DNA of 64,000 nt, taken from positions 496,001 to 560,000 of the forward strand of contig JANJGN010000385.1 in NCBI GenBank assembly GCA_026770705.1, read 5' to 3'. Made by a program: the position numbers and the translations under genes. This document shows, piece by piece, positions 35,513 through 64,000 of this stretch (positions are counted from its first letter, which is position 1; the number at the start of each line of letters is the position of its first letter). This stretch comes from Isurus oxyrinchus (lineage: Eukaryota). The notes beneath the pieces were generated by a model. That model had not been told where the DNA came from, searched no databases, and saw nothing but the letters and a program-made list of their open reading frames with translations.

Positions 35513-35769
35513 GTAAGTGCTGTGTTATAATTACTCAACAATTCACATCCAACACTCAATGGGAAATAATAGTGTTTGATTTGCTTGTTTTTTGGCCGTG
35601 TTAACCAGCGCCACTATTTTTAATGATTTGTCTATTTCTGCTCCCAGATCCATAAGCTTATTGTGTGTGATTGAATCCACATCATAGCTGTAACATAAAC
35701 CGAGCTGAGGGGTGATGACACCTCCCCCCTGAGTGAAGTATCTCCTCCCCACTACACCTTCTACCCCTC

Positions 35770-36740
35770 ACACTGTCCGTGTAAACCCCCGTCCCATCTC
35801 CAGCCTCTCTTTCCCCTCCAAAGTCCTGCAACCTGTTTCCATCTCCCGAATCTGTTCCCATCTTTCCCGGAACTCCATGTTTGAATCCCTCCAATCAGGT
35901 TCCCACCCCAGCCACTGTGCTGAAACAGCTCTTATCAAGGTCACAAATGGCATCCTGTGTGACTGTGACAAAGGTCAACTTTCCCTCCTCGTCCTTCTCG
36001 ATCTGTCTGCAGCCTTTGACACGCTCGACCACACCATCCTCCTCCAACACCTCTCCACTGTCGTCCAGCTGGGTGGGACTGCTCTCCCCTGGCTCCATTC
36101 TTATCCATCTCATCGTAGCCAGAGAATCACTTGCAATGGCTTTGCAGCATCATCTGAACAGTGTTAGTTTTCACCTGTCCACTGAGGATCCCCAGCTCTA
36201 CCTCACCACCACCTCTCTCGACTCCTCCACTGCTGCTAAATTATCAGGCTGCTTATCCGACATCCAGTACTGGATGGGCAGAAATTCCCTCCAATTAAAT
36301 ATTGGAAAGACTGAAGCCATTGTCTTCATTCCCCGCTCCAAACTCTGTTCCCTCGCTACCAACTCCATTCCTCTCCCTGGCAGCTCTCTGAGATTGAAGC
36401 CAATCTGTTCACAGCTTTGTTGTCCCATTTGATCCTGAGATGAGCTTCCGGCCTCCTATCTGCGCCCTCACTAACACCGTCTATTTCCACCTCCGCAACA
36501 TCGCACGACGTCACCCTGTCTCAGCTCATCTGCTGCTGAAACCCTCATCCACGCCTTCATTACCTCCAGTCTCGACTGTTCCAACACACGCTCTACACTC
36601 CATAAACTTGAGGCCATCCAAAACTGCTGACCACGTCCTTACTCACACCAAGTCCCGTTCCCTTATCACCCGCTCTGCTCGATGACCGAGACTGGCTCCT
36701 GGTCAAGCAAAATGTCAACGTCCAAATTTTCATCTTTGTT
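35770..36740 (+). mobile_element. L2/CR1-superclade LINE RT fragment
   Basis: QSG..H..ETALIKVTN..LVLLDLSAAFDTLDHTILL..LQLNIGKTEAIVF. Confidence 0.88.
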
Positions 36741-38915: not shown

Positions 38916-39284
38916 TTGGACTGTCACAAGAGTGGAAAGGTGACACTCCACGAGAGGTGACAGCTCAGGAAGGTTCGTGTGTACAGATTCCATGTCATTA
39001 CAGTTATCCATCGTGTCTGGAAAACCAACCGCGAGGTGGAGTCTGGTTTAATAATGAGAAACAGATTCCCTGGGCTCCCATTGCCTTTCACTCCAAGGAT
39101 CACAGTCACGAGTTACCACGGTTCCGCCATCGGACCCGGCTGTCTGGAGACCTGAAAGATGGCGACTGTTCCCTGATTATAAACAACATCTGACGGGAAG
39201 ATGCAGGACCTTATTTTTTCAGAATAGAATTTGACAATGGTCCGAGCCATAACTATTACCCTGTAACCCAGCTTCACGTTTCTG
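38916..39284 (+). pseudogene. Unit D V-set exon V2 with nonsense codon
   Basis: 369 nt, nearly identical to V3, but AGA became TGA at 39191-39193. Confidence 0.85.
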
Positions 39285-41220
39285 GTAAGTGCTGTGTTAT
39301 AATTACTCAACAATTCACATTCAACACTCAATGGGAATTAACACAAACTGTGACGTTTACATATTAACACAAAACACAGTTTATTATAACACACTGTCTG
39401 ATTCTCAATAACCTGGTGATAGCTTCCAGTTCAGTCCTAAAGCAATGTCTAATACTCACTTTAATATCAATGATTAAATGTGTTGACTGTGTCTATCAAT
39501 GTTATCAGTTTATCCACTCCCATCAATCTCTCAAATCCTGTCTTGAAGTCTGACATATCGACAGAAGAAAGATTTACATTTCTACAGCGCCTTTCACCAC
39601 CCTAGACTTCCCACCCTAAACCTCTCCCTCTCCCTCTTCCTCTCCCTCTCTCTCTCTCTCTCTCTGTCTCTTTCTCTCTGTCTCTCCATAACACCGACCT
39701 CTTCTGGTCAGCTGTCGCTAATATCTACACGTGTCTGGGTGACATACTTTGTTTTATGACGCTCCTGTGTAGCACCTTGAGGTGATTTGTCATGTTAAAG
39801 TTGTTGTGAAAATATAAGTTGTTGCCCTTTGACTCTCGACCCCAGATCGAGTCTTATTTTTGAGGGAATGTACAACCTCCTTAGATTTCTGACCAAAATG
39901 TCATTTGATTATTTTTATTGAGCGAATGCCAAGCCCCGATACCGAGCGAGAGCCTCCTCATTTGCCGAGTTTAGGGTGATGAGTCAGCCCCTTAGTCTGT
40001 AGAGGGGATTCTCCTCGGTAATGTGCAGCCTTGTTTGTGTCTCTCCACAAGCGCATGAGGGGTTTGTACAGAGGCTGCAGCGCTGGAGGGGGTCTGCACA
40101 GGGGTCCTGGCCTGTCCTGAGCCAGTTTTAGCAAGGACAACTCTGGCCTTGGCAGCTGAAAGCCAGCCATTGGACAGACGGGGCCTGTCACAAGGAGCCT
40201 GTTAGTCACTCCCCCCCCGTGTCTCCTGTGCTCGGATCCAGACCATGTTGGCTGGTGGATCTGGCTCAGGAAGGGTCCTCCCCATGGGACCCCCAGATGG
40301 AAGGTGGGTCGAGCGGGTCAGTCACTTGCATGTTTATTCTGCAGCTTTAATATTTTAAGAAGGTAAGAATGTAGGAACATAAGAAATAGGGACAGGAGCA
40401 GGCCATTCGGCCCCTCCAGCCTGCTCTCACTGATCTGGTTGTGGCCTTAACTCCATTTTCCTGCCTGTCCCCCAAACCCTTGACTCTCTTGTCGATCAAA
40501 AACCTGCCTCACTCAGCCTTGAGTCTATTCAATGGCCCAGCCTCCACTGCTCTCTGGGGAAGAGAATTCCACAGGCTAGCGCCCCTCTGAGAGAGGAAAT
40601 TCCTCCTCATCTCAGTCTTAAATGGGAGAGCCCTCATTCTGAAACTGTGCTCCCTGGTTCTAGATTCCCCCACGAGGGGGAAACATCCTCCCAGCATCCA
40701 CCCTGTCAAGCCCCCTCGGAATTGGATATGTTTCAATAAGGTCACCCCTCATTCTTCTAAACTCCAATGGATACAGGCCCAACCTGCTCAACATTTCCTC
40801 ACAGGACAAACCCTTTAATCCCAGGAATCAGCCCAGTGAAGCTTCTCTGAACTGCCTGTACACAATGATCCTGTTACAATCTCACTAACGCCCTGTGCAG
40901 CTGTTGCAAGACTTCCCTCCTTTTATACTCCATCCCTTTGCAATAAAGGCCAACATTCCACTTGCCTTCCTCATTCCGTGGTGTTCCTGAATGCTGACTT
41001 TCTGTGATTCATGTACAAGGACACCCAGATCCCTCTGTACTGCATTCTGCAGCCTGTCTCCATTTAAATAATATCCTGTTTTTCTATTCTTCCTGCCAAA
41101 ATAATTTGTTGCCATTCTCCTCAGTATTGACCATCCCCCCAATTCAGCCTCATCTGTAAATTTTGAGTCTAGTGGATCCACAAACCATCCAGAGATAAAT
41201 ATTGAGATTTCTCTCCCCAG

Positions 41221-41589
41221 TTGGACTGTCACAAGAGTGGAAAGGTGACACTCCACGAGAGGTGACAGCTCAGGAAGGTTCGTGTGTACAGATTCCATGT
41301 CATTACAGTTATCCATCGTGTCTGGAAAACCAACCGCGAGGTGGAGTCTGGTTTAATAATGAGAAACAGATTCCCTGGGCTCCCATTGCCTTTCACTCCA
41401 AGGATCACAGTCACGAGTTACCACGGTTCCACCATCGGACCCGGCTGTCTGGAGACCTGAAAGATGGCGACTGTTCCCTGATTATAAACAACATCAGACG
41501 GGAAGATGCAGGACCTTATTTTTTCAGAATAGAATTTGACAATGGTCCGAGCCATAACTATTACCCTGTAACCCAGCTTCACGTTTCTG
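41221..41589 (+). CDS. Unit D V-set exon V3
   Basis: 369 nt, open, AG/GT intact, YFFRIE Arg retained. Confidence 0.88.
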
Positions 41590-43520
41590 GTAAGTGCTGT
41601 GTTATAATTACTCAACAATTCACATTCAACACTCAATGGGAATTAACACAAACTGTGACGTTTACATATTAACACAAAACACAGTTTATTATAACACACT
41701 GTCTGATTCTCAATAACCTGGTGATAGCTTCCAGTTCAGTCCTAAAGCAATGTCTAATACTCACTTTAATATCAATGATTAAATGTGTTGACTGTGTCTA
41801 TCAATGTTATCAGTTTATCCACTCCCATCAATCTCTCAAATCCTGTCTTGAAGTCTGACATATCGACAGAAGAAAGATTTACATTTCTACAGCGCCTTTC
41901 ACCACCCTAGAGTTCCTACCCTAAATCTCTCCCTCTCCCTCTTCCTCTCCCTCTCTCTCTCTCTCTGTCTCTTTCTCTCTGTCTCTCCATAACACCGACC
42001 TCTTCTGGTCAGCTGTCGCTAATATCTACACGTGTCTGGGTGACATACTTTGTTTTATGACGCTCCTGTGTAGCACCTTGAGGTGATTTGTCATGTTAAA
42101 GTTGTTGTGAAAATATAAGTTGTTGCCCTTTGACTCTCGACCCCAGATCGAGTCTTATTTTTGAGGGAATGTACAACCTCCTTAGATTTCTGACCAAAAT
42201 GTCATTTGATTATTTTTATTGAGCGAATGCCAAGCCCCGATACCGAGCGAGAGCCTCCTCATTTGCCGAGTTTAGGGTGATGAGTCAGCCCCTTAGTCTG
42301 TAGAGGGGATTCTCCTCGGTAATGAGCAGCCTTGTTTGTGTCTCTCCACAAGCGCATGAGGGGTTTGTACAGAGGCTGCAGCGCTGGAGGGGGTCTGCAC
42401 AGGGGTCCTGGCCTGTCCTGAGCCAGTTTTAGCAAGGACTACTCTGGCCTTGGCAGCTGAAAGCCAGCCATTGGACAGACGGGGCCTGTCACAAGGAGCC
42501 TGTTAGTCACTCCCCCCCGTGTCTCCTGTGCTCGGATCCAGACCATGTTGGCTGGTGGATCTGGCTCAGGAAGGGTCCTCCCCATGGGACCCCCAGATGG
42601 AAGGTGGGTCGAGCGGGTCAGTCACTTGCATGTTTTTTCTGCAGCTTTAATATTTTAAGAAGGTAAGAATGTAGGAACATAAGAAATAGGGACAGGAGCA
42701 GGCCATTCGGCCCCTCCAGCCTGCTCTCACTGATCTGGTTGTGGCCTTAACTCCATTTTCCTGCCTGTCCCCCAAACCCTTGACTCTCTTGTCGATCAAA
42801 AACCTGCCTCACTCAGCCTTGAGTCTATTCAATGGCCCAGCCTCCACTGCTCTCTGGGGAAGAGAATTCCACAGGCTAGCGCCCCTCTGAGAGAGGAAAT
42901 TCCTCCTCATCTCAGTCTTAAATGGGAGAGCCCTCATTCTGAAACTGTGCTCCCTGGTTCTAGATTCCCCCACGAGGGGGAAACATCCTCCCAGCATCCA
43001 CCCTGTCAAGCCCCCTCGGAATCGGATATGTTTCAATAAGGTCACCCCTCATTCTTCTAAACTCCAATGGATACAGGCCCAACCTGCTCAACATTTCCTC
43101 ACAGGACAAACCCTTTAATCCCAGGAATCAGCCCAGTGAAGCTTCTCTGAACTGCCTGTACACAATGATCCTGTTACAATCTCACTAACGCCCTGTGCAG
43201 CTGTTGCAAGACTTCCCTCCTTTTATACTCCATCCCTTTGCAATAAAGGCCAACATTCCACTTGCCTTCCTCATTCCGTGTTGTTCCTGAATGCTGACTT
43301 TCTGTGATTCATGTACCAGGACACCCAGATCCCTCTGTACTGCATACTGCAGCCTGTCACCATTTAAATTATATCCTGTTTTTCTATTCTTCCTGACAAT
43401 ATAATTTATTGCCATTCTCCTCAGTATTGACCATCCCCCCAATTCAGCCTCATCTGTAAATATCGGGTTCAGTGGATCCACAAACCATTCAGAGTTAAAT
43501 ATTGAGATTTCTCTCCCCAG

Positions 43521-43886
43521 CTGAACCCTCACAAGAGTGGAAAGGTGACACTCCACGAGAGGTGACAGTGCAGGAAGGTTCCTGTGTACAGATTCCATGT
43601 CATTATAGTTATCCATCATGTCTGGAAAACCAACCGCGACGTGGAGTCTGGCTTAATAATGAGGAATGGAGAACATCGTCTATAGCCTTTCACTCCAAGG
43701 ATCACAGTCACGAGTTACCACGGTTCCACCATCGGACCCGGCTGTCTGGAGACCTGAAAGATGGCGACTGTTCCCTGATTATAAACAACATCACATGGGA
43801 AGATGCAGGACCTTATTTTTTCAGAATAGAATTTGACAATGGTCCGAGCCATAACTATTACCCTGTAACCCAGGTTCACGTTTCTG
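43521..43886 (+). CDS. Unit D V-set exon V4
   Basis: 366 nt, open, AG/GT intact, Arg retained, distinct C-C' loop WLNNEEWRTSS. Confidence 0.88.
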
Positions 43887-44614
43887 GTAAGTGCTGTGTT
43901 ATAATTACTCAACAATTCACATTCAACACTCAATGGGAAACAACACAAACTGTGACGTTTACATATTAACACAAAACACAGCTTATTATAACACACTGTC
44001 TGATTCTCAATAACCTGGTGATAGCTTCCAGTTCACTCCTAAAGCAACCTCTTATACTCACTTTAATATCAATGATTAAATGTATTGACTGTGTCCATCA
44101 ATGTTATCAGGTTATCCACTCCCATCGATCTCTCTAATCCTGTCTCGAAGTCTGACTTAGCGACAGAAGAAAGATTCACATTTCTGTAGCACTTTTCACC
44201 ACCTCAGCATGGACCAAATCACTTCACAGCCAATGAGCTGATTCCTGAATTTTAGTTACTATTGTAATGTGGGAAACACAGCAACCAATTTGCGCACAGC
44301 AAGCTCCCACAAATTGCAAAGTAAAAAATGGCCTAGATCGCTGAGGGACTGATGGGTTAGTGCACTCCAAACTCTGGTCTGCTCCACCACCCTCACCCAC
44401 TATTATCAGTTCAAGTGTCTCGGAGTGAACGTGTATTAAGCTGAGAGACAGAAACACCAAAGTCTCAAAGCAGGAAATTCTCTCCTAATCATTGTAACCT
44501 CTCAGATCTGATATCATCCTTGTAAAAGTGCTTTTTCTTGTGGGACTGTGATTTCTATTTGAACTGATGCTTCACGTTATATTTCTCTAAAAGGATCCAT
44601 TCTCTGTCTGTTAG

Positions 44615-44911
44615 ATTTCACAGATAAACCCATGATATTCCCTGCTGAAATTATTGCAGGAAAGCGTGTGGATGTAAGCTGCACCTTCAACACAACGTGC
44701 AATGGAACAGCAGCACCTGTCTTAACCTGGGACACTCCCACTGACGTACCTGTATCAGTCTCAAACACTGTAACTCAGCATGGTGTCACTCTGACCTATA
44801 CTTCTGTTCTGACCCTGATCCCATCACTCAAACACCACAGACACAATCTCAGCTGCAGAGTGAGATATCCATCTGTTTCATCGGAGCGGACCCTCGTACT
44901 AACTATGCAAG
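44615..44911 (+). CDS. Unit D C2-set exon
   Basis: 297 nt, phase 1/1, ttAG...G|GTAAGT, with the Siglec domain-2 extra Cys (CTFNTTC). Confidence 0.9.
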
Positions 44912-45232
44912 GTAAGTACGGACACCCTTCATTCTACATCAGCACTCCCTCAGCGCTGACCCTCTGACAGTGCAGCCCGTTCTCAGTGTCCACATTCTCA
45001 TGCCTCTCAAAGTGCTTCACAGTCGATAGAAGTTAACTGATCTTTATTTGATTGTTGCTGAATGAAGAGACAAGCTGTCTAAACTTTGCATCTCACACAC
45101 ATTATTTTCCATGGCAACACCTCCTCCAATCAGAGACCACTTGCTGATTAACCAGCACTCTCTTCCCTTTAAATATAAATTGTTGTTCACTTTCTGTTGG
45201 TAAACCTGCAATCTGTCTTGTTGAGTCCAGTC

Positions 45233-47890: not shown

Positions 47891-49379
47891 TTCTCCGCCG
47901 ATGCTGCCAGACCTGCTGAGTTTTTCCATGTATTTCTGTTTCTGTTTCTGTTTTGAATTTCCAGCATCTGCAGTTTTTTTGCTTTTAGTGCTGGGCAGTT
48001 CCTCAGCAAGGATTCGGGCCACAAAACATTGCGAGTGCTGTGGGTCTGCGCCACGATTTAGAGAGCTGTGCTTGGCACGCCTATTCTAGTCCCAGTCCAG
48101 TGTGGTGGGGAGAGTCTGGCAGTCCTGGGTTGGTCGTGCCCAGCATGGTGTGCAGGACGTGGTCAGTCCCTCACACACGTCCATCCTGGGGGTGGGTGTC
48201 TTGATACTAGGCCGCAGGTGGCACAATCCCAGTCAGGGGAGGCATCTGCAGCCTGTCAGTGGGGAGCAGGTAATATAGAGAGTAGGGGTGGGGGTGGGAA
48301 TCGAGGGGGGCCGGTGGTCTCTGTAAGTCACAGTACAATGGGCCTCTAGTTGGAGAGAGGTCAGGTCTACATGGGGCATTGGGATGTCAACATCAGACAG
48401 TCTAGGGAGGAGGACTGGGATGTCAACCCCGAACACAATAAGATCAAGGATTAAAGAGGAAGGGAGGAGACTGATTGGAAGGAGGGGAATGTGCACATTA
48501 TGCTCCTCCAGCACGATGGGAGGGACTGTGATGGTTACGGGGGTGGGGGGGGGTGGTGACGTGTGAGGGGATAGACGCTTACCTGGTGGTATTGCCTCAG
48601 CCTCACCCTTTTTCAAGCTGATCCAATGTCGCAGTTGAAGAATAAGCTACAAAACAAATTGGCAGGGGAGGTCTCCCAGGGCCTGTGGGAGACATCACCC
48701 ACTGCATCTTCGGCCTGTTTGAAGGGGCACCCGAACAATTCCGGCTTTTCCAAATGATGAGGAAGACACAGCTGCACCCCGAGTCCCCTACTGGGGATCC
48801 AGAAGGTTGCAATAGCGCTGCGAGGGACTCATGGGCTCCACAGTGACTCCCTAATTAGCAACTGGAAGGTTTATGTTCATTTATCTTTATTATCCGTTCA
48901 TATTGAGCTCCTGATTTGTCACCTTACTGTACCTCGTCCAATGCTTCTGTTATCAGGACTTCCACATCGATGTGAAAGAGCCATGATGATAGCAGACAGT
49001 CGCACAATGGGAATGGCACTAGGCCAGTGATCCAGAGGCCCAGGTGAATGCTTTGAAGGCACGGGTTCAAATCCCACCACGGCAGCTGGAGGAATTTCAG
49101 TTCGATTAATCAATAAATTTAATTGATTGATACATTTTTTTCTTATTCATTTCAGGGATGTTGGTGTCGCTGGCTAGGCCAGTATTTGTTGCCCATCCCC
49201 AATTGCCTTTGAGAACATCTGGATATCTGAGTTAGGATCAGGAGTAGGTCACTCAGTCCCTCGAACCTGCTCTGCCATTCAGTAAGATCATGGCTGATCT
49301 GATTGTCACCTCAACCTCAGATTCCTGCCTACCCCCAATGACCTTTCACCCCCTTGTTAATCAAGAATCTATCTAGCTC

Positions 49380-51340
49380 TGTGGAAGGGGAGCCAATCAA
49401 TCGTGCTGCTTTGTCCTGGATGGTGTCGAGCTTCTTGAGTGTTGTTGGAGCTGCACTCATCCAGGCATGTGGAGAGTATTCCATCACACTCCTGACTTGT
49501 GCGTTGTAGATGGTGGACAGGCTTTGGGGAGTCAGGAGGTGAGTTACTGTCTGCAGGGTTCCCAGCCTCTGACCTGCTCTTGCAGCCACAGTGTTTATAT
49601 GGCTGGTCCAGTTCAGTTTCTGCTCAATGGTAACTCCCAGGATGTTGATATTGGGGGATTCATTGATGGTAATGCCATTGAATGCCAAGGGGCGATGGTT
49701 ATGAATGGTCTGTGGGATATTCTGGTACAAAATTTCAACACTCAGACTCCAGATGCAATATTCAAGTGGTTCCTTTATTAGGCATGTGGGGAGCAAACGC
49801 TGGGCAGTCCAGGCGCTTCTCCACCGAGGTTCAAATGAGCACAGTTTATATATTTTTTACTCTCAGTTACAAGGTAATGGTATTAGTTAGACAAAGGCCA
49901 CAGCACAATGACCCTCCGGTGGGCTGATAATTGTGTTCTTGTTCAGTAATTACAGGGCAGAGACTGGCTATTGTCCTTTTGAGACAGCAAAGAATCTATG
50001 TTTGTTCGCTACAAAAGGTTACCGGAGGCTGACTGGATGTGGTTCAAGGCCATCGGACGGTGTGAAATAACCTTCCCCATTTCTTGATTGAGTCACCCTG
50101 TGTCCTTGTGTGTGTGTCTCCCATTTCCTCATTGCAAATTTACAGCTGAGCCCTTAGTACAGGTTTTTAAGTTTTCACGTAAGGATGTGTACGCTTTGGT
50201 GCCCTAGCTGCTGGTCCTGGCTGGCTCTTGAACATAAATCCAAATTTTCTGCACCTTCAATTAGATTCTCTCTTGTTGGAGCTGGTCATTGCCTGGTACT
50301 TGTGTGGCATGAATGTTACTTGTCACCTGTCAGCCCAAGCCTGGATGTTGTCCAGGTCTTGCTGCATTTGGACATAACTTGCTTCAGTATCTGAGGAGCC
50401 GTGAATGATGCTGAACATTGTGCAAACATCAGCAAACATCCCCACTTCTGACCTTATGATGGAAGGAAGGACATTGATGAAGCAGCTGAAGATGGTTGAG
50501 CCTAGGACACTACCCTGAGCAACTCCTGCAGTGATGTCCTGGAACTGAGATGATTGACCCCCAACAATCACAACCATCGTCCTTTCTGCTGGGTATGACT
50601 CCAAGCAGCAGAGAGTTTTCCCCCGATTCCCATTGACTCCAGTTTTGCTCGGGCTCCTTGATTTGCCACACTCAGTCAAATGCTGCCTTGATGTCAAGGA
50701 CAGTCACTCTCACCTCACCTCTGGAGTTCAGCTCATTTGTGCATGTTTGAACCAAGGCTGTAATGAGGGCAGGAGCTGAATGATCCTGGTGGAACACAAA
50801 CTGAGCGTCAGTGAGCAGGTTCTTGGTAAGCAGGTGCTGCTTGCAAGCGCTGTTGATGACCCCTTCCATCACTTTAGTAATGATCAAGAATAGACTGCTG
50901 GGGAATTGGCTGGGTTGGATTTGTCCTGCTTTTTGTGTACAGGACGTACCCCATAGCCGGGTAGTTGCCAGTGTTGCAGCTGTACTAGAAAATTCCAGAA
51001 AAGCTTGGCTAGGGGCGCAGCAAGTTCTGGAGCACAAGTCTTCAGTACTATTGCCAGAATATTGTCAGGGCCTGGAGCCTTTGCAATATCCAGTGCCTTC
51101 AGCCCTTTCTTGATATCACGTGGAATTAATCGAATTGGCTAAAGATTGGCATCTCTGATGCTGGGGACCTCAGGAGGAGGCCGAGATGGATCAGCCACTC
51201 AGCACTTCTGGCTGAAGATTGTTGCGCATGCTTCAGTCTTGTCTTTTGCACCGATGTGCTGGGCTCCTCCATCATTGAGGATGGGGATATTTGTGGAGCC
51301 TCCTCCTCCAGTGAGTTGTTTAATTGTCCACGACTGGATG
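49380..51340 (-). mobile_element. Non-LTR retrotransposon RT fragment (CR1/L2 superclade)
   Basis: LDIKAAFD, AGVAQGSVLG..MFADV, ILGVTIEQKLNWTSHI. Confidence 0.85.
49702..50259. mobile_element. Solo LTR nested in the LINE
   Basis: TGAA...TTCA termini with gtta/atta TSD; LINE sequence resumes on both sides. Confidence 0.6.
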
Positions 51341-53615: not shown

Positions 53616-54107
53616 AAACAAAGAAGTTTACATTATAAACACTATAAACACAGGTTAGATTAAAAGTGCAGTATATTGGTACAAAGATAGGCCATAATGA
53701 AAACTTCAATATGAGATCGTCACTAATAAATCCAATGGGGATTTCAGGAGAAATCTCTTCACCCAGACAGTGGGGAGAATGTGGAACTCGCTCCCACAGA
53801 GAGTAGTTGAGGTGAATAGTGTCGATGTATTTAAGGGGAAGCTGGATAAACACACGAGGGAGAAATGAATAGAAGGATATGGTGATGGGGTGAGATGGAG
53901 AAGGGGTGGGCGGAGTCTCGTGAGGAGCAGGAACACCAGCATGGAGCAGATGGGCCAAATGGCTTCTTTCCCTGCTGTAAAACGCAGGTAAAGTTTCAGT
54001 TGGAATTAATGAACAGGGCCTGTGTTAAATAGATTGCTAAGCAGTAGATAAGGAGGGGAGAGGCTGTGGCATGGTGCAGGATGACCTTGCGTGAATGAGG
54101 CCAGGGT

Positions 54108-54224
54108 CTAATATCTACAGCAGAGACCACAAGTCTCATTTGGTTCTCTCCAATTACAGCAGTTACAGCAGAATCTGCAGAGCTGCTGTCTGCTCATTCT
54201 GTTCTGGCGCTGCAGCAAGGAGCC
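54108..54224 (-). CDS. hamp: Hepcidin exon 3 (pro-region end, furin site and mature 8-Cys peptide)
   Basis: Acceptor cttttccAG at 54226-54225. Phase-0 translation is GSLLQRQNR-MSRQQLCRFCCNCCNWREPNETCGLCCRY* (TAG 54110-54108), with the hepcidin C-x2-CC-x-CC-xn-C-x2-CC pattern after RxxR sites. Confidence 0.93.
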   Translation of the reverse strand, partial: GSLLQRQNRMSRQQLCRFCCNCCNWREPNETCGLCCRY

Positions 54225-54309
54225 CTGGAAAAGCAGGAGGACAATAGGTGAGAACATTCCGGAAAGAAAGAAGGCATCATTTCAATCAGGCGCGTCATTG
54301 GAAGGAGGA

Positions 54310-54925
54310 TGGCGCATTTCTATAGCGCCTTTCCCCTCCTCAGGATGGCCCAAAGTGTTCCACAGCTGAAGGAAGGACTTTTTCTGAAGTGAGCTCACCG
54401 CTGTAATGTAGGAAACGCAGCAGGCAATTCACGCACAGCAAGATCCCACAAACAGAAATGTGATAATGGCCCCGATTTTCAGTTTTTTACCAATGTCAGT
54501 TGAGGGATAAATGTTTGCCCCAGGAAAGCAGACATAACTGCATCTCATCCACCCCCCACCACCCCCTCCACACATACCCCCAACTCCTGACGCACTTCAT
54601 CTAAATTGTGGCCATGGAATCCTCTATATCCACCTGAGAGGGCAGATGTTGTCTCAGTTTAACATCTCATCTGAAAGACAGCGCCTTCAACAGTGCAGCA
54701 CCCCCTCAGTACTGACCCTCCGACTGTGCAGCACTCCCTCAGTACTGACCGTCTGACAATGCAGCACCCCCTCAGTACTGACCCTCCGACTGTGCAGTCC
54801 CCCACCGGTACTGACCCTCTGACAGTGCAGCACTCCAAGACTGACCGTCTGACAATGCAGCACCCCCTCAGTACTGACCCTCCGACTGTCCTGCCCCCCC
54901 GCCGGTACTGACCCTCCGACAGCTC
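54310..54925 (-). mobile_element. DeuSINE-like (SacSINE1-type) SINE running into 33-bp repeats
   Basis: ...cagtttaacatctcatctgaaagacagc...acagtgcagcac... followed by tandem 33-mers. A similar copy is at 56620-57165. Family assignment is from memory. Confidence 0.55.
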
Positions 54926-56463
54926 GGTAATTTCTCAATTACGCCTGGTGGTCCTTTTAACTCAGAGCTGAGAGTTGCAGAGAATCGAGCAGACACCCTG
55001 AACTGACACTTGCAGTGCAAGTACTGGGAGCGCGCTGGTCATTATCATGCTGCTGTCTGTGGGATCTTACTGTGCGCCAATGGCTGATTCTTTTCCCACA
55101 GTACATCAGTGACCTCACATGAAAGAAAAAAAGCACTTGATTGTCTGCGAAACAGTTTGGGACGTCCTGATGTGTTGGAAGGCGCTAGAGAAATGCAAGT
55201 CCTCTTTGTCTTTCACTCGATCCTCTAAGGTGTCTGTTGATTAACCAGCCTCTCGGTGTATGATGTAGGCCTGGTTATAAACAGTTAGAAGGATCAAATA
55301 TCAAAAGTGCTTTGGCTGACAGTCAAACCGATTGTGCATTCGGAGAGATTAGATATGGTCTGCACACAATGACTCCAGTCTCTGGCACTGACTGCCGCCT
55401 GGGGTCTCCCTTCCACATAACACTCACAACTTGCATTTACACAGCGCCTCTGACATTGCAAAATGTCCCAGCCCACATTACCGGAGCGTAAATCAGAGAG
55501 AAGTCTAACACTGAGTCACATATGGAGATATTAGGGATAGGTGACCAAAAGCTTGGTCAAAGATGTCAGTTTTTAAGGAGCGTCTTAAAGGAGAGAGAGA
55601 GAGAGAGAGGCAGAGAGGTTAAGGGAGGGTATTCCGGAGCTCAGGGCCCCAGGCAGCTGAAGGCACGGCCGCCAATGGTGGAGCGATGGGAATCAGGGGG
55701 ACCCGGGAGATGCAGTAATGTCAGAGATTTTGGAGGAACATCGGGACCGGAGGAGGTGTTCTCCTGCTCCATATCTCTCTCTCTCTTCCTCTCATCCACT
55801 CCTCCTCTCCCTGTCTCTCTCTCTCTCCTACTCTTCCTCTCAATTGCCCTCTCTCCCAATCTTTCTCTCCTCTCTCCCTTTTCCTGTCTCTCTCCCTCTC
55901 TCTCTCCCTGTCTCATTCTCCCACTCTGTATCTCTCCCTCTCTCTCACACTATTTTTGTACCTTTCGCTCACTCTGTAACTCTCCCTTTCCTGTTAATTT
56001 CTCTCTCTTGGACAATCTCTCTTCCCTTTTCACTTTCCCTCACTCTGCATCTCTTCTTTAATTTCTCCCTCTGTCACTCTCTCCCACCTATGTTCTTTCC
56101 CTTTCACCCCTCCCCGTCCCACTCTCTGTCTCTCTCTTCCAATCCCTCCCTCCCCTATTCCATCCCTCTCTCCGACTCTCGACTCCCAGCCTCTCTTTAA
56201 CCCACTCCCAGGCTGGATCAGTCTCCCTCTCACTATTCCCGGCGTGGGTTACATTTAAAATTCCTGTGGGGATATGTTCACTTCCTTGGAATTGCCTCTT
56301 CCCAGCTTTGCAAAAAAAGTTGGGGGGGGGGGCTCGATTTCAAACATGCCTCCTGAGTATAACCGAGACAGACTGCCACTGAAATCAGCTTGAAATCAGA
56401 AAACTTTCTGTGGAAGAAACGAGCAGGGAGAAACCTTAAAATAAGGAATGAATTTCCACCTAC

Positions 56464-56520
56464 CGTGTCCGGGGAATCCACAGATTTCTCAATCGTCGAA
56501 GAACCTAAAGCAGTGTCAAC
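56464..56520 (-). CDS. hamp: Hepcidin exon 2 (pro-region)
   Basis: 57-nt phase 0/0 exon bounded by ctttttgcAG and GTAGGT. It reads VDTALGSSTIEKSVDSPDT, in frame with exon 3; the other two frames have stops. Size matches the short middle exon of vertebrate hamp. Confidence 0.75.
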
Positions 56521-57229
56521 CTGCAAAAAGAAAGAATTTATCAGGGAGAAAGTGAGAGGAGGATTGAGGGAGAGGGAGAGAGAGAGAGAGAGGTACAGGA
56601 GAGAGAGAGGGAGGAGGACAGACTTGCATTTCTCTAACGCCTTTCACCACATCCCAAAGCATTTCACAGCCACTGAAGGATGTTTTTGAAGTGCACTCAC
56701 ACTGTAGGAAATGTGGCAGCTGATTTGTGCACAGCAAGATCCCACAAATAGCAATGTGATCATGGCCTAGATCATCTGTTTTTGGTGATGTTGGGTGAGG
56801 GATAAATATTGGTGCCAGGACACCGGGGAGCTCTTCCTCCAAAGAGTGGCTGTGGGATCTTTCACACCCGCCCGAGAGGGCAGACGGGGGACTCAGTTTA
56901 ATGTCTCATTCAACATTGTTGCGCTCCCTCAGTACTAACCCTTTGACACTGCAGCACTCCCTTAGTATTAACCCTTCGATAGTGCTGCGCTCCCTCAGTA
57001 CTGTCCCTCCGTCAGTGCAGCTCTATTTCAGTACTAACCCTTCGACACAGCAGCACTCCCTCAGTACTGACCTCCGACAGTATAGCACTCCCTCAGTACT
57101 GTCCCTCCAATAGTGCAACACTTCCACACTACTGACCCTCTGAGAGTGCAGCACTCCCTCAGCACGGAGCGTTTATCTACATTATGGGACTGAATTCCCT
57201 GGAGTGAGACTCAGACCAGTGATTTAGGT

Positions 57230-58485
57230 AGGGTTGTGGGGGCTGGAGGAGGTTACAGCGATAGGGAGGGCTGTAGAGGCTGTAGGAGGTTACAGAGAAA
57301 GGGAGGGTTGTAAGGGCTGTAGGAAGTTACAGAGATAGGGAGGGTTGTAGAGGCTGTAGGAGGTTACAGAGATAGGGAGGGTTGTAGGGGCTGGAGGAGG
57401 TTACAGAAATAGGGAGGGCTGTAGAGGCTGTAGGAGGTTACAGAGATAGGGAGGGTTGTAAGGGCTGTAGGAAGTTACAGAGATAGGGAGGGTTGTAGAG
57501 GCTGTAGGAGGTTACAGAGATGGGGGAGTTGTGGGGGCTGGAGGAGGTTACAGAGGTAGGGAGGTGTGTAGGGGCTGTAGGAGGTTACAGAGATGGGGTG
57601 GTTGTGGGGGCTGGAGGAGGTTACAGATGTAGGGAGGGTTGTAGAGGCTGGAGGAGGTTACCAAAATAGACACTGCTGTAGGGGCCACAGTAGGTTACAG
57701 AGATAGGGAGAGTTATAGTGTGGAGAGGAGCTTATAGAGTTCAGGAGGATTGTAGGGGCTGGAGGAGGTTACAGTGATTGTGAGGGTTGTGGGGCCTGGA
57801 GGATTTTACAGAGATAGGGAGGGTTGTAGGGTCTGGAGCAGGTTACAGAGATAGGGAGGGTTGTAGGGTCTGGAGCAGGTTACAGAGATAGGGAGGGTTG
57901 TAGGGTCTGGAGCAGGTTACAGAGATAGGGAGGGTTGTAGGGTCTGGAGGAGGTTACAGTGATCGTGAGGGTTGTGGGGCCTGGGGGAGGTTACAGAGAT
58001 AGGGAGTGTTGTGGGGACTGTAGGAGGTTACATAGATAGGGAGGGTTGTCGGGTCTGGAGGAGGTTACAGAGATAGGGAGGGTTATAGGGACTGGAGGAG
58101 GTTACAGAGATAGGGAGGGTTGTAGAGACTGTAGGATGTTACAGAGATAGGGATTGTTGTAGGGGCTGGAGGATGTTACAGAGATAGGGAGGGTTGTAGG
58201 GGCTGGAGGAGGTTACAGAGATAGGGAGGGTTGTAGGGGCTGGAGGATGTTACAGAGATAGGGAGGGTTGTAGGGGCTGGAGGAGGTTACAGAGATAGGG
58301 AGGGTTGTAGGGGCTGGAGGAGGTTACAGAGATAGGGAGGGTTGTACGGGCTGGAGGAGGTTACAGAGATAGGGAGGGTTGTAGGGGCTGGAGGAAGTTA
58401 CAGAGATAGGGAGGGTTGTAGGGGCTGGAGCAGGTTACAGAAATAGGGAGGGTTGTACGGGCTGGTGGAGGTTACAGAGATAGGG
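57230..58485. repeat. 37-bp minisatellite (LINE 3'-derived) in hamp intron 1
   Basis: Unit aggggctggaggaggttacagagatagggagggttgt; related arrays at 18215-18530, 36745-37190 and 61140-61720. Confidence 0.92.
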
Positions 58486-58689
58486 AGTCGCTGAGGAGGG
58501 ATTGAAAACAAGAATGAGAATTTCAGGGGAAATGACAGAAGGAAATGATGTTAAATTCATAGAGGGTGACAATATTAAAGGCACGAACATAATAATATCA
58601 AACTGCGGAAGAGACCAGTCTATCTGGGTGGTAGACGTAGAGTCATGTGCAAGAAACACCTCACCCAGAGGGACATCTCTTAGCTTAAC

Positions 58690-58766
58690 CTCGACAAGGA
58701 GAAGAAGTGACTCAGCTGCAGGGAGAGCAGCAAAGTCAGAGTGAACAAGACAAGTCGCCATTTCAT
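58690..58766 (-). CDS. hamp: Hepcidin exon 1 (signal peptide; 1-nt frame conflict)
   Basis: ATG 58766 gives MKWRLVLFTLTLLLSLQLSHFFSLS (signal-like) but reaches the donor AG|GTTAAG in phase 2. A second ATG at 58761 gives MATCLVHSDFAALPAAESLLLLVE in phase 0, in frame with exon 2. A TATA box lies upstream. Confidence 0.72.
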
Positions 58767-58849
58767 CTGGGAGCTTCCCATCTCTGCCTGTCTCTTCTGA
58801 TCTTCTGGCTCTGCTTTGATGCTTTGGTTTGTAACTAGAGGAGCTTCCT

Positions 58850-59340
58850 GCTCTTATACCTGAAACACTTGAAGGGGACAGCCGCGGGTGGGTAGCTGTG
58901 TGGTATTACACCCATTTCTGGATATTGCAGTGTCGATGTTCCCTGTCCCACTGGCCTGGGACCAGCAGTAAGGTCACTGGGACATTGACTGTCTGGCGCC
59001 GAGAACTATCAGTCCCTCCGCAACGCCCTTCACCTTGTGCAAATATGTGTTCATATTGATGAAACACAACATAGCAAAAACATAGGGGCTGGTTCTTATG
59101 TCGGCAAATCAGGTGAAGCGCACGCCCCCTAACCCCTTACTCCTCTCATTGCTCCTCCTTCCTGCCAGACACTTACTATTTTACAAATTGTGTGCGTTGC
59201 TTTTATTTTGGACAAGGGGCCTCGAGGGGGAACTGATTTACGCTGAGGTTTAGGGGTTAACAGCCATGTCATGTGTTGATCGGTCAGTGTTTACCATGTG
59301 GAGACTGTCTGTCACCAGCTTTGTTAATGGTTTATCCAGG
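58850..59340 (-). promoter_or_regulatory. hamp: Putative hepcidin promoter
   Basis: TATAAG at ~58858-58853; GGCGCC BMP-response-type element at 58995-59000 abutting AGAC/GTCT; C/EBP-like TTGTGCAA at 59035-59042; HNF1-like GTTAATGGTTTAT at 59323-59335. Confidence 0.6.
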
Positions 59341-60060: not shown

Positions 60061-62104
60061 GTTCCAGAATTGTTGTGTTTATTCGACAACAGAATAACAG
60101 AGGAAGGTTTCCTCTCTGCCCTCTTCAGCCCCACTGGGAAGGTCAGGATGAGAAGGTTGGGCTGGGTCCCCTGTACTGGACACTCGCTGAATCTTCCAAT
60201 GATAGTTCTGGGCTGGATTTCAAAACGCATAGACAAGGATTCAGTGTTCCATCACATTCTGCCTTTGTCTCTTTTCCTCTCGTTCTCTTTCTCTACCATC
60301 CTCTCTCTCTATCTATCTATCTTTCTCCTCATTCTCTCCTGCTTCATCTCTATCACTTTCTTTCTACTTCTTTGTGTGTCTCTGTCTGTCTCTCTCTCTC
60401 ACTCTTTCTTTCCTTGTCCTTATCTCTTTCAGTGTCTCCCTCTTTCTCTCTCTCTCTCTCTCTCTAAATGTGCCCCTCTCTAACAGTTTGGCCCAGTACT
60501 CTTATTTCCCTGTTTTACTGGTGTTCCATTTGAAGGTATACAAGACCAGATCAGACCAGAATGTTTATTTTCCAGTGTTTACTGTGTTTTTTTTCATTCT
60601 GGGTGTCTCTCGACTCTGTCTGTCCCTCTCTGTCCTTTTATTTCATTCTTTCATGTGATGTGGACATCACTGCCTAGGTCAGCATTTATTGCCCAACCCT
60701 AATTGCCCTTGTTCAGAGGCCACTTTTTAAAAGTGAACCACATTGCTGTGGGTCTGGAGTCACATGTAGGCCAGACCAGGTAAGGACAGCAGATTTCCCT
60801 CCCTAAAGGGCATTTGTGACCCTAATACAAGAATCAGCAATGGTTTCCTGGTCATCATCGGACTTTTAATTCCAGGTTTTTATTGAATTGAAATTCCACC
60901 AACTGCTGTGGTGAGATTCTAACCAGGGTCCCAGGAGCATTACACTGGGTCTCTGGATTACTGGTCCAGTGAAAATACCATCAGGCCAACACCTCCCCAC
61001 TCTTCCCTTCCACCATCTTTCACACTTGTTCTCTCTCTCTCTCACTCTCCTTCTCTCTACTCCCTCTCTCAGTCTCTGTCTGTCTCTCAATCTCTCTATC
61101 GCTCTCTCTCTCCCTGTCGCTCTCTCTCTGACTGTCTCCCTCCCTATATCTGTAACCTCCTCTCTCTGTCCCTTTCCTCCAGCCCCTACAACCCTCCCTA
61201 TCTCTGTAACCTCCTCCACCTCCCACAACCCTCCCTATATCTGTAACCTCCTCCACAAGCCCATACAATCCTCCCTATCCCTGTAACAACCTCCAGCCTG
61301 ACAACACCCCTATACATGTCACCTCCTCTAGCCACTGTAACCCTAATACTCTCCCAAGCCTCCACCAGCCTTGACAATCCTGCCCATCTCTGTAACATCC
61401 TCCAACCACCACAACCCTCCCTATTTCTGTAATCTCTTCCAGTCCCTACAACCCTCCCTATCTCTACAACCTGCTCCACCCCCTGCAACTCGCCCTATCT
61501 CTGTGTCATCCTCCAGCCCCTACAACCCTCCCTATACCTGTAACCAACTCCAGCCCCTACAACCCTCCCTATCTCTGGAACAGCTTCCAGCACCTACAAC
61601 CCTCCCTATCTCTGTAACCTCCTCCAGCCCCTACAACACTCCTTATCTCTGTAACCTCCTCCAGCCCCTACAACCCTCCCTATCTCTGTAACCTCCTCCA
61701 GCCCCTGTAACCCTCCCCATCTCTTGAAGGGTTCTCAAAATTTCCAACTGTCAAGGAACCCTGGGTTGGTGAGCGTGACCCCTGACCTCCTAGTGCAATT
61801 TGGTTAGGGTTTGGGGGTGGGACAAGGGTAAGGGCATTAGTAGCGTGATTCTCCCTCGTTATGCCGTGTGTTCCCCATTCTTAACTCAGTGTACTTTGTA
61901 AGTCTGTATAATCTCAGTGTCAACCTAATGTTATAAGTTCATTTGTGACTTCAGTAAACTCAGTTTTTGTCTTGCACCAAAACCAGTTGTCTGCTGCACT
62001 TTGTGACAAGCCCCGAATAAGTCCAAGGTCTAGAACCCAGGGAGTGGGAGCGATTCAGACGGCTCAGAAGTCGCAGGTGAAGCTGACACACACCACCACA
62101 CCCT

Positions 62105-62799: not shown

Positions 62800-63455
62800 C
62801 CAGCAACTCAGCAACTCCTCCAGTGAAACATTTCAGAGCAGCTGAGCTTGGTTTTCTGGAACCAGTCTCGGCCCAGAAGACTAGGGCCCTCACCTGTCGC
62901 TATGATCACTGGAAGCTGGGCTGTCTGCTGCCTGTAGGACACAGGTACTGGGATGAGGTCCTTTCCCTGTATGGATTCTCCAGTGTGTGTCTTCAGCTGA
63001 TCCATTGTTGGCTCTAAATTCAGCGTCTGGGTTCCTTCATTTAGCTGTTTAAATGTGGGCTCTTCCACCACTGTGTCTGAGGCTCCCGTATCTGCCCCAT
63101 TACTAGTGGCTGCCCATTCACTTGGGTTGTGATGGTTATAGGTTCAGTTTTTACCACTGTGACATTGGACAGGGAATAGACATCGGTATCAGCAGCTTCA
63201 GGCTCTGTGATATTATTCACTTCCATCATGTTGGTGCACTGCCTGGTGGGCTGTCTCGATTTCACCCTGCATTGCTTTATTACCCACCCCTTTCTTGTGG
63301 CAGTGATGGCATTCTGCCCCCTTGAACCTGCAGGTGTCCAGTACGTGCTCAATGCCCCCCACATCGAGAACAGGCCAACTTCGGAGTTGCTGCTGAAATA
63401 CTCCCACGAAGCCTTTTAGTTTCTGGAGCGGCAGAGACTGTCTCTCGCTTGGCGG

Positions 63456-63490
<35 letters not shown>

Positions 63491-64000
63491 GTTTGAGCCT
63501 CACGCCCGGTGGTTGGTTCCTGTCCCAGCTGAGGACTGGTGCCATGTTGTACATCCTGTAAATCCCGCCAGTCTCTCCCAGCACTTTCCATGCCTGGCGC
63601 TATTTCCATGGTGCGCTTCAAATCGATGTCGGCTTCTGCGAGTAAACGGCTCTGAATGGCGTTGGGGTGAACGACACAAACCAATCGGCCCCGCAACATG
63701 TCATTGAGTGTGTCTCCGAGGTCCCAGTGCTCAGTCACCTGCTTCCACTTCACTGTATAAGTTGTGATGGACTCTCCCTGGGCCCTTACTCTGGAGTTAA
63801 ACTTAAACTTCTGCATTATTACCCACGGCTTCAGCTGAAAACACATCTTCATGAGGTCGACTAATTGGTGAAAAGATTTAGAATTGGGTGCAATACACGT
63901 CACTGTCTTCAGCTCTGAGACTGTCAATCCTCACCAAACAATTCTTCCCTTCCAAGTCGCCGATTATTTTAGCACGTCCCACGAATGTGGCCACCCCATA
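62800..64000 (-). mobile_element. Gypsy (Mag-like) gag/protease fragment
   Basis: KFKFNSRVR..MLRGRLVC..CSRCGGH..GEGPSLLGRDW, with frameshifts. Confidence 0.85.

What the first reader, a model, noticed from the sequence alone, without database searches (positions are those of the whole stretch)
54108..58766. Hidden three-exon hepcidin gene in a shark-like genome, with an extended C5-C6 loop
Seen: three small minus-strand exons, not recovered as hepcidin by the ORF track, give signal + pro-region + RQNR/RMSR + CRFCCNCCNWREPNETCGLCCRY*. Known: hepcidins have 8 Cys, a 3-exon gene and furin processing, with about 4 residues between C5 and C6 (human HRSK). Here there are 8 (NWREPNET), including a Trp and an N-glycosylation sequon (NET). 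Inference: a structurally distinct cartilaginous-fish hepcidin of a size that automated annotation easily misses.
Basis: partly seen in the sequence, partly recalled or inferred. Interest (0 to 1): 0.9.

Follow-up and report, generated by a model that had tools for sequence, protein, structure and literature searches.

The report
Long-loop hepcidin gene, expressed, multi-copy
This is a real, very highly transcribed three-exon gene of the hepcidin family whose peptide has an unusually long hairpin loop and lacks the usual ferroportin-binding start, but it is one of at least two hepcidin types in this animal and this particular copy is one G short of the reading frame seen in the RNA.

Summary
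The three minus-strand exons are real. Exon 3 (54224-54108) matches Pfam Hepcidin above the curated cut-off (32.5 bits against 27). RNA contigs from three runs join the exons and cover them 100-500 times deeper than the introns. The 8-Cys pattern is canonical up to C5. The C5-C6 loop is 8 residues (NWREPNET), 4 longer than in the Pfam profile, human hepcidin and bass hepcidin.

- **Frame:** as assembled, exon 1 (92 nt) does not join exon 2 in frame. The RNA carries one more G at that junction, which restores the signal-peptide frame (31+19+38 = 88 aa). So this copy is either mis-assembled by one G or is a frameshifted member of the family.
- **Peptide start:** QQL lies between the RQNR/RMSR motifs and the first Cys. 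The likely mature peptide is 29 aa (MSRQQLC...), without His3 or a hydrophobic residue 4.
- **A second type:** the same RNA holds a sister transcript with an identical pro-region but a canonical start (MSHLSICMYCCG...).
- **Other copies:** the scan's first readers noted this same atypical hepcidin on many other pieces of this genome, and one 385 kb away on this piece.

My reading is a type-2-like, probably host-defence, hepcidin paralog beside a CD22/Siglec-like gene. Glycosylation, function and taxon are untested.

The parts
58987..59000 (-). GGCGCC-N5-GTC motif (BMP-responsive-element-like, with AGAC), about 165 bp upstream of the inferred transcript start
   Evidence: It is the only match in the 64 kb window, with 0.06 expected. 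The pattern was chosen after I had seen the sequence. GGCGCC is the BRE of the human hepcidin promoter (PMC3879105).
58853..58858 (-). TATAAG box, about 30 bp upstream of where RNA contigs begin
   Evidence: Read from the sequence. An X4 contig ends at 58825 with no differences from the window (table 8).
58690..58825 (-). Exon 1: 5'UTR of about 44 nt plus CDS 58781-58690 (MGSSQMKWRLVLFTLTLLLSLQLSHFFSLS + AG). It holds the signal peptide. In the RNA the exon side carries one more G.
   Evidence: hydrophobic core, Kyte-Doolittle 2.5 over 11 residues; joint 56520->58689 skips 2168 letters, seen in X1, X2 and X4.
56521..58689 (-). Intron 1 (GT..AG as assembled, 2169 nt). It holds a 37-bp minisatellite at 57225-58487.
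56464..56520 (-). Exon 2, 57 nt, pro-region VDTALGSSTIEKSVDSPDT. Only this frame is open.
   Evidence: RNA joints are seen on both sides. An ACG>ATG (Thr>Met) variant of the last codon is present in the RNA.
54225..56463 (-). Intron 2 (GT..AG, 2239 nt) with SINE-like 33-bp-periodic repeats
   Evidence: joint 54223->56463 (cut +1), CT..AC on the + strand, seen in X1, X2 and X4..
54108..54224 (-). Exon 3 CDS: end of the pro-region, overlapping RXXR motifs (RQNR, RMSR), the mature peptide and the stop. The 3'UTR runs on below 53900.
   Evidence: In one search no variant of 10% or more appears in this stretch in X1, X2 or X4. Depth is 1.9e5-5.8e5 against about 1e3 or less in the introns.
54111..54197 (-). 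Inferred 29-aa mature peptide MSRQQLCRFCCNCCNWREPNETCGLCCRY (Cys at 7,10,11,13,14,23,26,27; 4 Arg, 2 Glu)
   Evidence: The cleavage site after RQNR is inferred from the canonical sister transcript and from the human and teleost position of C1 at residue 7.
54132..54155 (-). Extended C5-C6 loop NWREPNET, containing the NET sequon
   Evidence: In one search, 33 residues match 29 profile positions.

Best explanation
The locus is a hepcidin-family gene of the usual build. Exon 1 encodes the signal peptide. Exon 2 and the start of exon 3 encode a short pro-region. Exon 3 encodes a proprotein-convertase site and an 8-Cys peptide.

Shown:
- Family membership, exon structure and splicing.
- Very high transcript abundance of this copy or of copies at least 99% identical to it.
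- A hairpin loop 4 residues longer than in reference hepcidins.
- An N-terminal segment (MSRQQLC) without the His3 and hydrophobic residue 4 of ferroportin-active hepcidins.
- A co-expressed sister transcript with a canonical MSHLSIC start.

Inferred:
- The precursor (88 aa in the RNA frame) is secreted and cut after RQNR to a 29-aa peptide, and possibly further after RMSR to a 26-aa form starting with Gln. It folds into the disulfide-laddered beta-hairpin with a longer tip.
- As with teleost Hamp1 and Hamp2, the canonical paralog is the ferroportin ligand. This long-loop type acts mainly as a host-defence or other non-iron peptide.
- The family is multi-copy and lies beside CD22/Siglec-like genes.
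- The copy in this window lacks one G at the exon 1 donor relative to the RNA.

The confidence of 0.6 is for the whole statement. Identity and expression alone I put at about 0.9, and the functional split at about 0.55.
For: - **Family:** Pfam Hepcidin scores above the gathering cut-off. It is the only such Cys pattern in the window.
- **Expression and splicing:** RNA contigs in three runs give both junctions, and exons are 100-500x deeper than introns. No variant of 10% or more is seen in the mature-peptide codons.
- **Frame:** the extra G restores the signal-peptide frame and makes both introns phase 0.
- **Loop:** there is a 4-residue insertion against both solved hepcidins.
- **Second type:** the loose end at 54192 in X1 reads on as HLSICMYCCG after RQNRMS. 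An X2 contig skips exactly the mature-peptide codons (54112-54191) and rejoins at the stop.
- **Teleost precedent:** Hamp1 (QSHLSLC...) regulates ferroportin and Hamp2 (HSSPGGCRFCCNCC...) does not (PMC5665920).
- **Synteny:** V-set/Ig_CD22 exons lie at 35-44 kb. From memory, human HAMP lies beside MAG and CD22.
Against: - Function is inferred from sequence only.
- The peptide keeps Ser2, Leu6, Cys7, Arg8 and Phe9 and a free C-terminus, so ferroportin binding is not excluded.
- Its net charge is only +2, which is not especially antimicrobial-like.
- It appears far more abundant than the canonical type in these runs, which is unusual for an accessory paralog. Contig depth is a poor measure, though.
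- RQNR and RMSR are minimal RXXR sites, not RX[KR]R.
- The exons are identical between copies, so the RNA cannot be assigned to this copy.
- The window's own 3'UTR allele (G at 53931) makes up only about 0.2-1% of the depth.
Confidence: 0.6

Rival explanations
1. This particular copy is a dead or crippled member of the family. A real 1-nt deletion at the exon 1 donor (GG instead of GGG) shifts the signal-peptide frame into a stop in exon 2. The abundant RNA then comes from intact sister copies elsewhere in the genome. This is compatible with the main reading of the gene type.
For: - Exon 1 is 92 nt, and every other frame of exon 2 has a stop.
- All three listed junction forms carry the extra letter.
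- Intron contigs differ from the window by about 0.5-2%. At six sites every run, organism B included, agrees against the window (table 3).
- The window's allele at 53931 makes up at most about 1% of the RNA depth.
- First-reader notes describe other copies as intact, and only this window drew a frame note. Those notes are unchecked.
Against: - A GG/GGG run in a multi-copy region is a plausible assembly or polishing slip.
- The rest of the gene (promoter, splice sites, all codons) is undamaged.
- No mRNA spliced at the canonical sites without the G appeared among the joints listed. However, 192 joints were not shown.
Confidence: 0.4
2. It is the animal's main iron-regulatory hormone. The long loop sits at the solvent-exposed tip of the hairpin and is tolerated. 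The divergent N-terminus has co-evolved with the animal's ferroportin.
For: - Transcript depth is enormous in two runs.
- A GGCGCC-N5-GTC BMP-element-like motif lies in the proximal promoter.
- Cys7, Arg8, Phe9 and the free C-terminus are kept.
- The ferroportin contacts are the N-terminal residues and the C-terminal carboxylate, not the loop (PMC9882908).
Against: - A co-expressed paralog has the conserved xSHLSIC start.
- Position 4 is Gln and position 3 is Arg here.
- In teleosts the type without the QSHLSL start does not regulate ferroportin (PMC5665920).
Confidence: 0.25
3. The gene is correct as assembled, and its intron 1 is removed at non-canonical sites (TT..AG or GT..CA) to give the in-frame RNA.
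For: The observed joint 56520->58689 fits the assembled letters exactly, with one ambiguous G.
Against: Both site pairs are essentially unused by the spliceosome. A perfect GT..AG pair lies one base away.
Confidence: 0.03
4. Translation starts at the third ATG (58761, strong Kozak context). That ATG is in frame with exons 2-3 as assembled and would give a hepcidin without a signal peptide. This is the reading of the scan's note s1-864345.
For: ATG 58761 has A at -3 and G at +4 and leaves no left-over bases before the donor.
Against: - The RNA has the extra G, which puts the signal-peptide frame in frame and this one out.
- The first ATG (58781) also has a good context (G at -3, G at +4).
- The alternative N-terminus MATCLVHSDFAALPAAESLLLLVE carries charges in its hydrophobic stretch.
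- An 8-Cys peptide needs the secretory pathway to form its disulfides.
Confidence: 0.02

Closest known systems
Teleost type-2 hepcidin (sea bass Hamp2 / hybrid striped bass hepcidin, PDB 1S6W)
   Same: The CRFCCNCC core is identical and the tail CG-x-CCR[FY] is the same. There is a Pro-Asn in the loop. The QSHLSL-type N-terminus is absent. It coexists with a canonical paralog and belongs to a multi-copy family. In bass this type is antimicrobial and does not regulate ferroportin (PMC5665920).
   Different: The loop here is 8 residues against 5 (PNMSG). The pro-region is shared almost exactly with the canonical paralog. The lineage is different, so the split is probably independent. The net charge is only +2.
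Human hepcidin-25 (HAMP; PDB 1M4F, 2KEF, 6WBV)
   Same: It is a three-exon gene with the mature peptide in exon 3. By my recollection of the human gene, the exon sizes run parallel (31/19/38 aa here against 30/20/34). C1 is at residue 7 of the mature peptide and the Cys positions are identical up to C5. A Siglec (MAG/CD22-type) gene lies next door. There is a GGCGCC element in the proximal promoter.
   Different: The loop here is 8 residues against 4 (HRSK). The start is MSRQQL instead of DTHFPI, so there is no His3 (no ATCUN site) and no aromatic or hydrophobic residue at position 4. The convertase site is RQNR/RMSR instead of RRRRR. The human gene is single-copy.
Teleost type-1 hepcidin (Hamp1, QSHLSLCRWCCNCC...)
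   Same: The family and the Cys frame are the same. Ser2, Leu6, Cys7 and Arg8 are shared.
   Different: His3 and Leu4 are replaced by Arg and Gln. It is the sister transcript seen in the RNA (MSHLSICMYCCG...), not this gene, that carries the Hamp1-like start.

Membership tests
Hepcidin (Pfam PF06446) | Profile match above the curated gathering score | tested here: met
   32.5 bits against a cut-off of 27, E 1e-7, residues 5-37 on profile positions 24-52 of 53.
Hepcidin (Pfam PF06446) | Eight cysteines spaced C-x2-CC-x-CC-loop-C-x2-CC | tested here: met
   gaps are 2,0,1,0,8,2,0. Only the loop length departs from the pattern (8 against 4-5).
Hepcidin (Pfam PF06446) | Three-exon gene with the mature peptide in the last exon, transcribed and spliced | tested here: met
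   both joints are seen in X1, X2 and X4, and exons are 100-500x deeper than introns.
Hepcidin (Pfam PF06446) | Signal peptide in frame with the pro-region and the peptide | tested here: inconclusive
   It is in frame in the RNA, which has one extra G. It is out of frame in the window as assembled.
Hepcidin (Pfam PF06446) | Proprotein-convertase site just before the mature peptide | tested here: inconclusive
   Only minimal RXXR motifs are present (RQNR, RMSR). Cleavage itself cannot be tested with these tools.
Hepcidin (Pfam PF06446) | Beta-hairpin held by four disulfides | not testable with these tools
   Single-sequence AlphaFold2 gave two helices at pLDDT 68, which is not usable. No homologs were retrieved to build an alignment.
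Hepcidin (Pfam PF06446) | Conserved neighbourhood (HAMP beside MAG/CD22-type Siglec genes) | tested here: met
   V-set plus Ig_CD22 exons at 35119-43966 (+), above the cut-offs. The human gene order is from my own knowledge. No USF2 gene was found in the 5 kb upstream, which holds only repeats.
Iron-regulatory (type-1) hepcidin | N-terminus x-[ST]-H-[FL]-[PS]-[IL]-C, which contacts ferroportin | tested here: not met
   The start here is M-S-R-Q-Q-L-C. The first 6 residues make the ferroportin contacts (PMC9882908). The canonical form MSHLSIC is present in a sister transcript.
Iron-regulatory (type-1) hepcidin | Binds ferroportin and causes its internalisation; induced by iron | not testable with these tools
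   This needs a peptide assay and iron-loading experiments.
Type-2 (antimicrobial) hepcidin, as in teleosts | Lacks the type-1 N-terminus, coexists with a type-1 gene, and is multi-copy | tested here: met
   Searches cover the first two points. Copy number rests on unchecked first-reader notes.
Type-2 (antimicrobial) hepcidin, as in teleosts | Common descent with the teleost Hamp2 genes | not tested
   No other chondrichthyan or teleost precursor could be retrieved. An independent origin seems more likely, because the pro-region is shared with the canonical paralog.

The most novel reading that the evidence does not exclude
A cartilaginous fish has independently evolved a two-type hepcidin system. 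One type is a conserved ferroportin-type hormone. The other is a greatly amplified, massively expressed long-loop type, interleaved with Siglec-like receptor genes. Its extended hairpin tip (Trp plus an NET sequon) would be a new functional surface and possibly the first N-glycosylated hepcidin.
Probability: 0.25. Interest if true: 0.7.

Novelty: new variant of a known kind. Interest (0 to 1): 0.45.

Why it matters
Hepcidin is the master iron hormone of vertebrates and is also an antimicrobial peptide. How the two roles were divided is known only from teleosts. A cartilaginous-fish genome with a canonical hepcidin and a highly expressed, amplified long-loop variant would have several uses:
- It would place a second, probably independent, split of the two roles near the base of the jawed vertebrates.
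- It would offer a natural test of which parts of the peptide ferroportin binding needs.
- It would add a new scaffold (a longer hairpin tip) for peptide engineering.
- It shows how small multi-copy peptide genes can be mis-assembled by a single base and missed by annotation.

Tried and rejected
- **The search for homologous proteins:** I queried the 49-aa and the 57-aa open stretches around exon 3. No candidate came back. This is not evidence of novelty. A teleost precursor with the same CRFCCNCC octamer (seen in 1S6W) would share four 5-residue words, yet none was returned. That index evidently does not serve fish hepcidin precursors.
- **The search of protein representatives with exon 3:** it returned only a 1442-aa Cys-rich repeat protein at E 3.5e-4, which is not a hepcidin.
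- **Metagenome contig scan:** nothing was found.
- **Paper searches:** I searched for shark or chondrichthyan hepcidin and for the loop motif. No description of a cartilaginous-fish hepcidin sequence turned up. The only relevant remark is that nurse-shark plasma hepcidin had no whale-shark ortholog in the protein set used (PMC9207270). That paper's held supplement has no hepcidin entry.
- **AlphaFold2 without an alignment:** the model was helical and of low confidence, so I discarded it and ran no fold search.
- **Other ways of restoring the frame:** I checked other donors and acceptors by hand, a second acceptor inside exon 2, and skipping exon 2. All of them hit stops.
- **A second hepcidin in this window:** none was found.
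- Each exon was searched by reference.
- **The 30-letter loose end:** I translated it by hand and sent it to no tool.
Full report
**What is in the sequence**

On the minus strand there are three short exons.
- Exon 1 has its CDS at 58781-58690 and encodes MGSSQMKWRLVLFTLTLLLSLQLSHFFSLS plus two bases.
- Exon 2 is 56520-56464 and encodes VDTALGSSTIEKSVDSPDT.
- Exon 3 has its CDS at 54224-54108 and encodes GSLLQRQNRMSRQQLCRFCCNCCNWREPNETCGLCCRY followed by a stop.

All four splice sites are canonical GT..AG, with good polypyrimidine tracts. A regular-expression scan of all six frames of the 64 kb window finds this hepcidin-type Cys pattern once only. BLAST of each exon against the window finds no second copy.

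**Family**

Exon 3 alone matches Pfam Hepcidin (PF06446) at E 1e-7 and 32.5 bits, above the curated cut-off of 27. Its 33 matched residues lie on 29 profile positions, a net insertion of four. Against the solved structures, HMMER aligns CRFCCNCC....CGLCCRY to bass hepcidin (1S6W, CRFCCNCC PNMSG CGVCCRF) and to human hepcidin (1M4F). In both cases it places a 4-residue gap in the C5-C6 loop. Counting from the residue after RQNR, the Cys residues stand at 7,10,11,13,14,23,26,27. The human positions, from my own knowledge, are 7,10,11,13,14,19,22,23.

**Expression and splicing**

I laid X1, X2, X4 and X5 on 53900-58950.
- In X1 and X2 the bins holding the exons have depths of 1.6e5-6e5. Repeat-free intron bins have about 1e3 (X1) or 20-400 (X2). 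These runs are therefore RNA with a very abundant spliced transcript. X4 shows the same transcript at a depth about a thousand times lower.
- X5 (organism B) covers exons and introns alike at a depth of 2-9 and looks like DNA of a close relative.
- No variant of 10% or more is reported inside the mature-peptide codons, so the long-loop peptide is confirmed at the RNA level.
- Contigs begin at about 58825, some 30 bp after a TATAAG box (58858-58853).

**The frame problem**

Exon 1 as assembled has 92 coding bases, and exon 2 is open in one frame only. The signal-peptide frame therefore runs into a stop (…SLS-R-L-T-L-L-stop), while the third ATG (58761) is in frame. Another first-reader note (s1-864345) made the same point.

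The RNA resolves this. The exon 1/exon 2 joint skips 2168 letters (56521-58688), not the 2169 of the GT..AG intron, with one ambiguous G. Two low-depth variants of the joint have the same length. The form is seen in X1 (8 contigs), X2 and X4. The mRNA therefore reads …TCG AGG | GTT GAC… The signal peptide is in frame, both introns are phase 0, and the precursor is 31+19+38 = 88 aa.

With the assembled letters this would need a TT..AG or GT..CA intron, which I regard as very unlikely. Either the assembly lacks one G of a GGG run, or this copy really has a 1-nt deletion and the RNA comes from sister copies.

Several observations bear on this choice.
- Intron contigs differ from the window by about 0.5-2%.
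- At six sites all runs, including organism B, agree against the window.
- The window's own 3'UTR allele (G at 53931) makes up only about 0.2% (X1) to 1% (X2) of the depth.

This fits a multi-copy family in which this copy contributes little. It also fits a different individual or haplotype.

**A second hepcidin type**

In X1 a contig follows the window through …RQNRMS (to 54192) and then departs. Its 30 reported letters, reverse-complemented and read in frame by hand, give H-L-S-I-C-M-Y-C-C-G (table 7). In X2 a contig (depth 6460) leaves at the same base and rejoins at 54111, just before the stop. It therefore replaces exactly the mature-peptide codons.

The animal thus expresses a sister hepcidin with the same pro-region and 3'UTR but a canonical start, MSHLSIC. 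This compares with teleost Hamp1 QSHLSLC (PMC5665920) and human DTHFPIC. It also fixes the likely processing site: cleavage after RQNR puts C1 at residue 7 in both types. That gives a 29-aa peptide here, MSRQQLCRF…, with four Arg and two Glu. The His-to-Arg change creates a second RXXR site (RMSR), which could yield a 26-aa form starting with Gln.

An ACG>ATG (Thr>Met) variant of the last codon of exon 2 is also present, at different proportions in X1 and X2. This is further evidence of more than one expressed copy or allele.

**Copy number**

First-reader notes of this scan are unchecked, so I use them as leads only. They list 88 entries mentioning hepcidin in this genome. Many describe the same 'atypical 29-aa, long loop, sequon, no His' peptide on other pieces, and one lies 384,865 letters before this window on the same piece. 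Others read 'duplicated hepcidins differ almost only in the mature peptide' or describe promoter-plus-prepro-exon relics. My RNA observations agree with a multi-copy family of at least two types.

**Neighbourhood**

Exons at 35119-35601, 41202-41669 and 43502-43966 (+) match V-set and Ig_CD22 above the cut-offs, and 44632-44964 matches C2-set. In human, HAMP lies beside MAG and CD22 (my own knowledge), so the linkage is ancestral and supports orthology of the locus. The 5 kb upstream holds only repeats and retroelement fragments, with no USF2.

A GGCGCC-N5-GTC motif lies at 59000-58987, about 165 bp upstream of the transcript start. It is the only one in the window, with 0.06 expected. GGCGCC is the BMP-responsive element of the human hepcidin promoter (PMC3879105). 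I chose the pattern after reading the sequence, so this is a hint only. A TTGCACAA (C/EBP-like) site nearby is at chance frequency.

**How it most likely works**

These parts are shown:
- It is a hepcidin-family precursor gene.
- It is spliced and very abundant in two runs.
- It has a long loop and a non-canonical N-terminus.
- A canonical sister transcript is expressed alongside it.

These parts are inferred:
- The precursor is secreted, cut after RQNR by a convertase, and folds into the four-disulfide hairpin.
- In human hepcidin the first six residues and the C-terminal carboxylate contact ferroportin (PMC9882908), and peptides of the first 7-9 residues suffice. The loop is not among the contacts that paper reports, so it is probably tolerated.
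- The loss of His3, and above all of the hydrophobic residue 4 (Gln here), argues against strong ferroportin binding.
- In sea bass, Hamp1 regulates ferroportin and Hamp2 (HSSPGGCRFCCNCC…) does not (PMC5665920).

I therefore read the long-loop type as a type-2-like, host-defence-leaning paralog, with about 55% confidence for this functional part. The canonical sister would be the iron hormone.

The main rival is that the long-loop type is itself the iron hormone (about 25%). Its abundance and the BMP-like element favour that reading.

The NET sequon is nine residues from the C-terminus and next to a Cys. Bass Hamp2 has a sequon (NMS) in the same loop, and by my recollection the purified bass peptide is not glycosylated. 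I put glycosylation at about 15%.

**Novelty**

None of the searchable papers describes a cartilaginous-fish hepcidin sequence or this motif. The only mention is that nurse-shark plasma hepcidin lacked a whale-shark ortholog in the protein set used. The protein databases on hand returned nothing, but evidently they do not cover fish hepcidin precursors, so the blank carries no weight. Public genome annotations may already list such genes as 'hepcidin-like'.

I file it as a new variant of a known kind. It is of moderate interest, mainly for the two-type system, the amplification beside Siglec genes and the altered hairpin.

The taxon ('shark-like') could not be verified, because organism names are coded.

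I never built or searched the spliced precursor as one sequence. The exons were handled separately by reference.

Noticed in passing
window 54112-54192 (RNA contigs of X1 and X2, tables 5 and 7): A second expressed hepcidin transcript shares the pro-region (…RQNRMS) and the 3'UTR but continues HLSICMYCCG…. This is a canonical type-1-like mature peptide encoded elsewhere in the genome.
   Followed up: partly
window 56465: The RNA shows a C>T change on the gene strand in the last codon of exon 2 (ACG>ATG, Thr>Met). It is the major form in X1 (depth 13928 against 2475) and the minor form in X2 (6521 against 26304). This points to several expressed copies or alleles.
   Followed up: no
window 55270: A minor alternative acceptor inside intron 2 (ttataaccag|gcc) is joined to exon 2 in X1 only, at depth 844. 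It reads into a stop after nine codons.
   Followed up: no
window 57225-58487 and 61175-61724: A 37-bp minisatellite (34 copies) fills much of intron 1. A second array of the same unit, about 15 copies in the opposite orientation, lies 2.4 kb upstream of the promoter. Exon 1 and the promoter therefore sit between inverted arrays.
   Followed up: no
window 58987-59000: GGCGCCAGACAGTC, a BMP-responsive-element-like motif, is unique in the window (0.06 expected) and lies about 165 bp upstream of the transcript start.
   Followed up: partly
window 35119-44964 (+): Repeated V-set/Ig_CD22 exons and a C2-set exon belong to a CD22/Siglec-like receptor gene that converges on the hepcidin gene. This matches the HAMP-MAG-CD22 linkage of mammals.
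   Followed up: partly
window 54690-54922 and 56924-57162: SINE-like elements with 33-bp internal periodicity lie in intron 2. They attract very many RNA and DNA contigs from all four runs, so depth there is not informative.
   Followed up: no
window 49329-51037 (-) and 62808-63927 (-): ORFs here look like fragments of a non-LTR reverse transcriptase and of a retroelement gag. They flank the hepcidin gene on both sides.
   Followed up: no
window 53931, 55307, 56156, 56844, 58567, 58907: At these sites every run that covers them, including the second organism, agrees on a base different from the window. The window's copy therefore carries private changes or errors.
   Followed up: no
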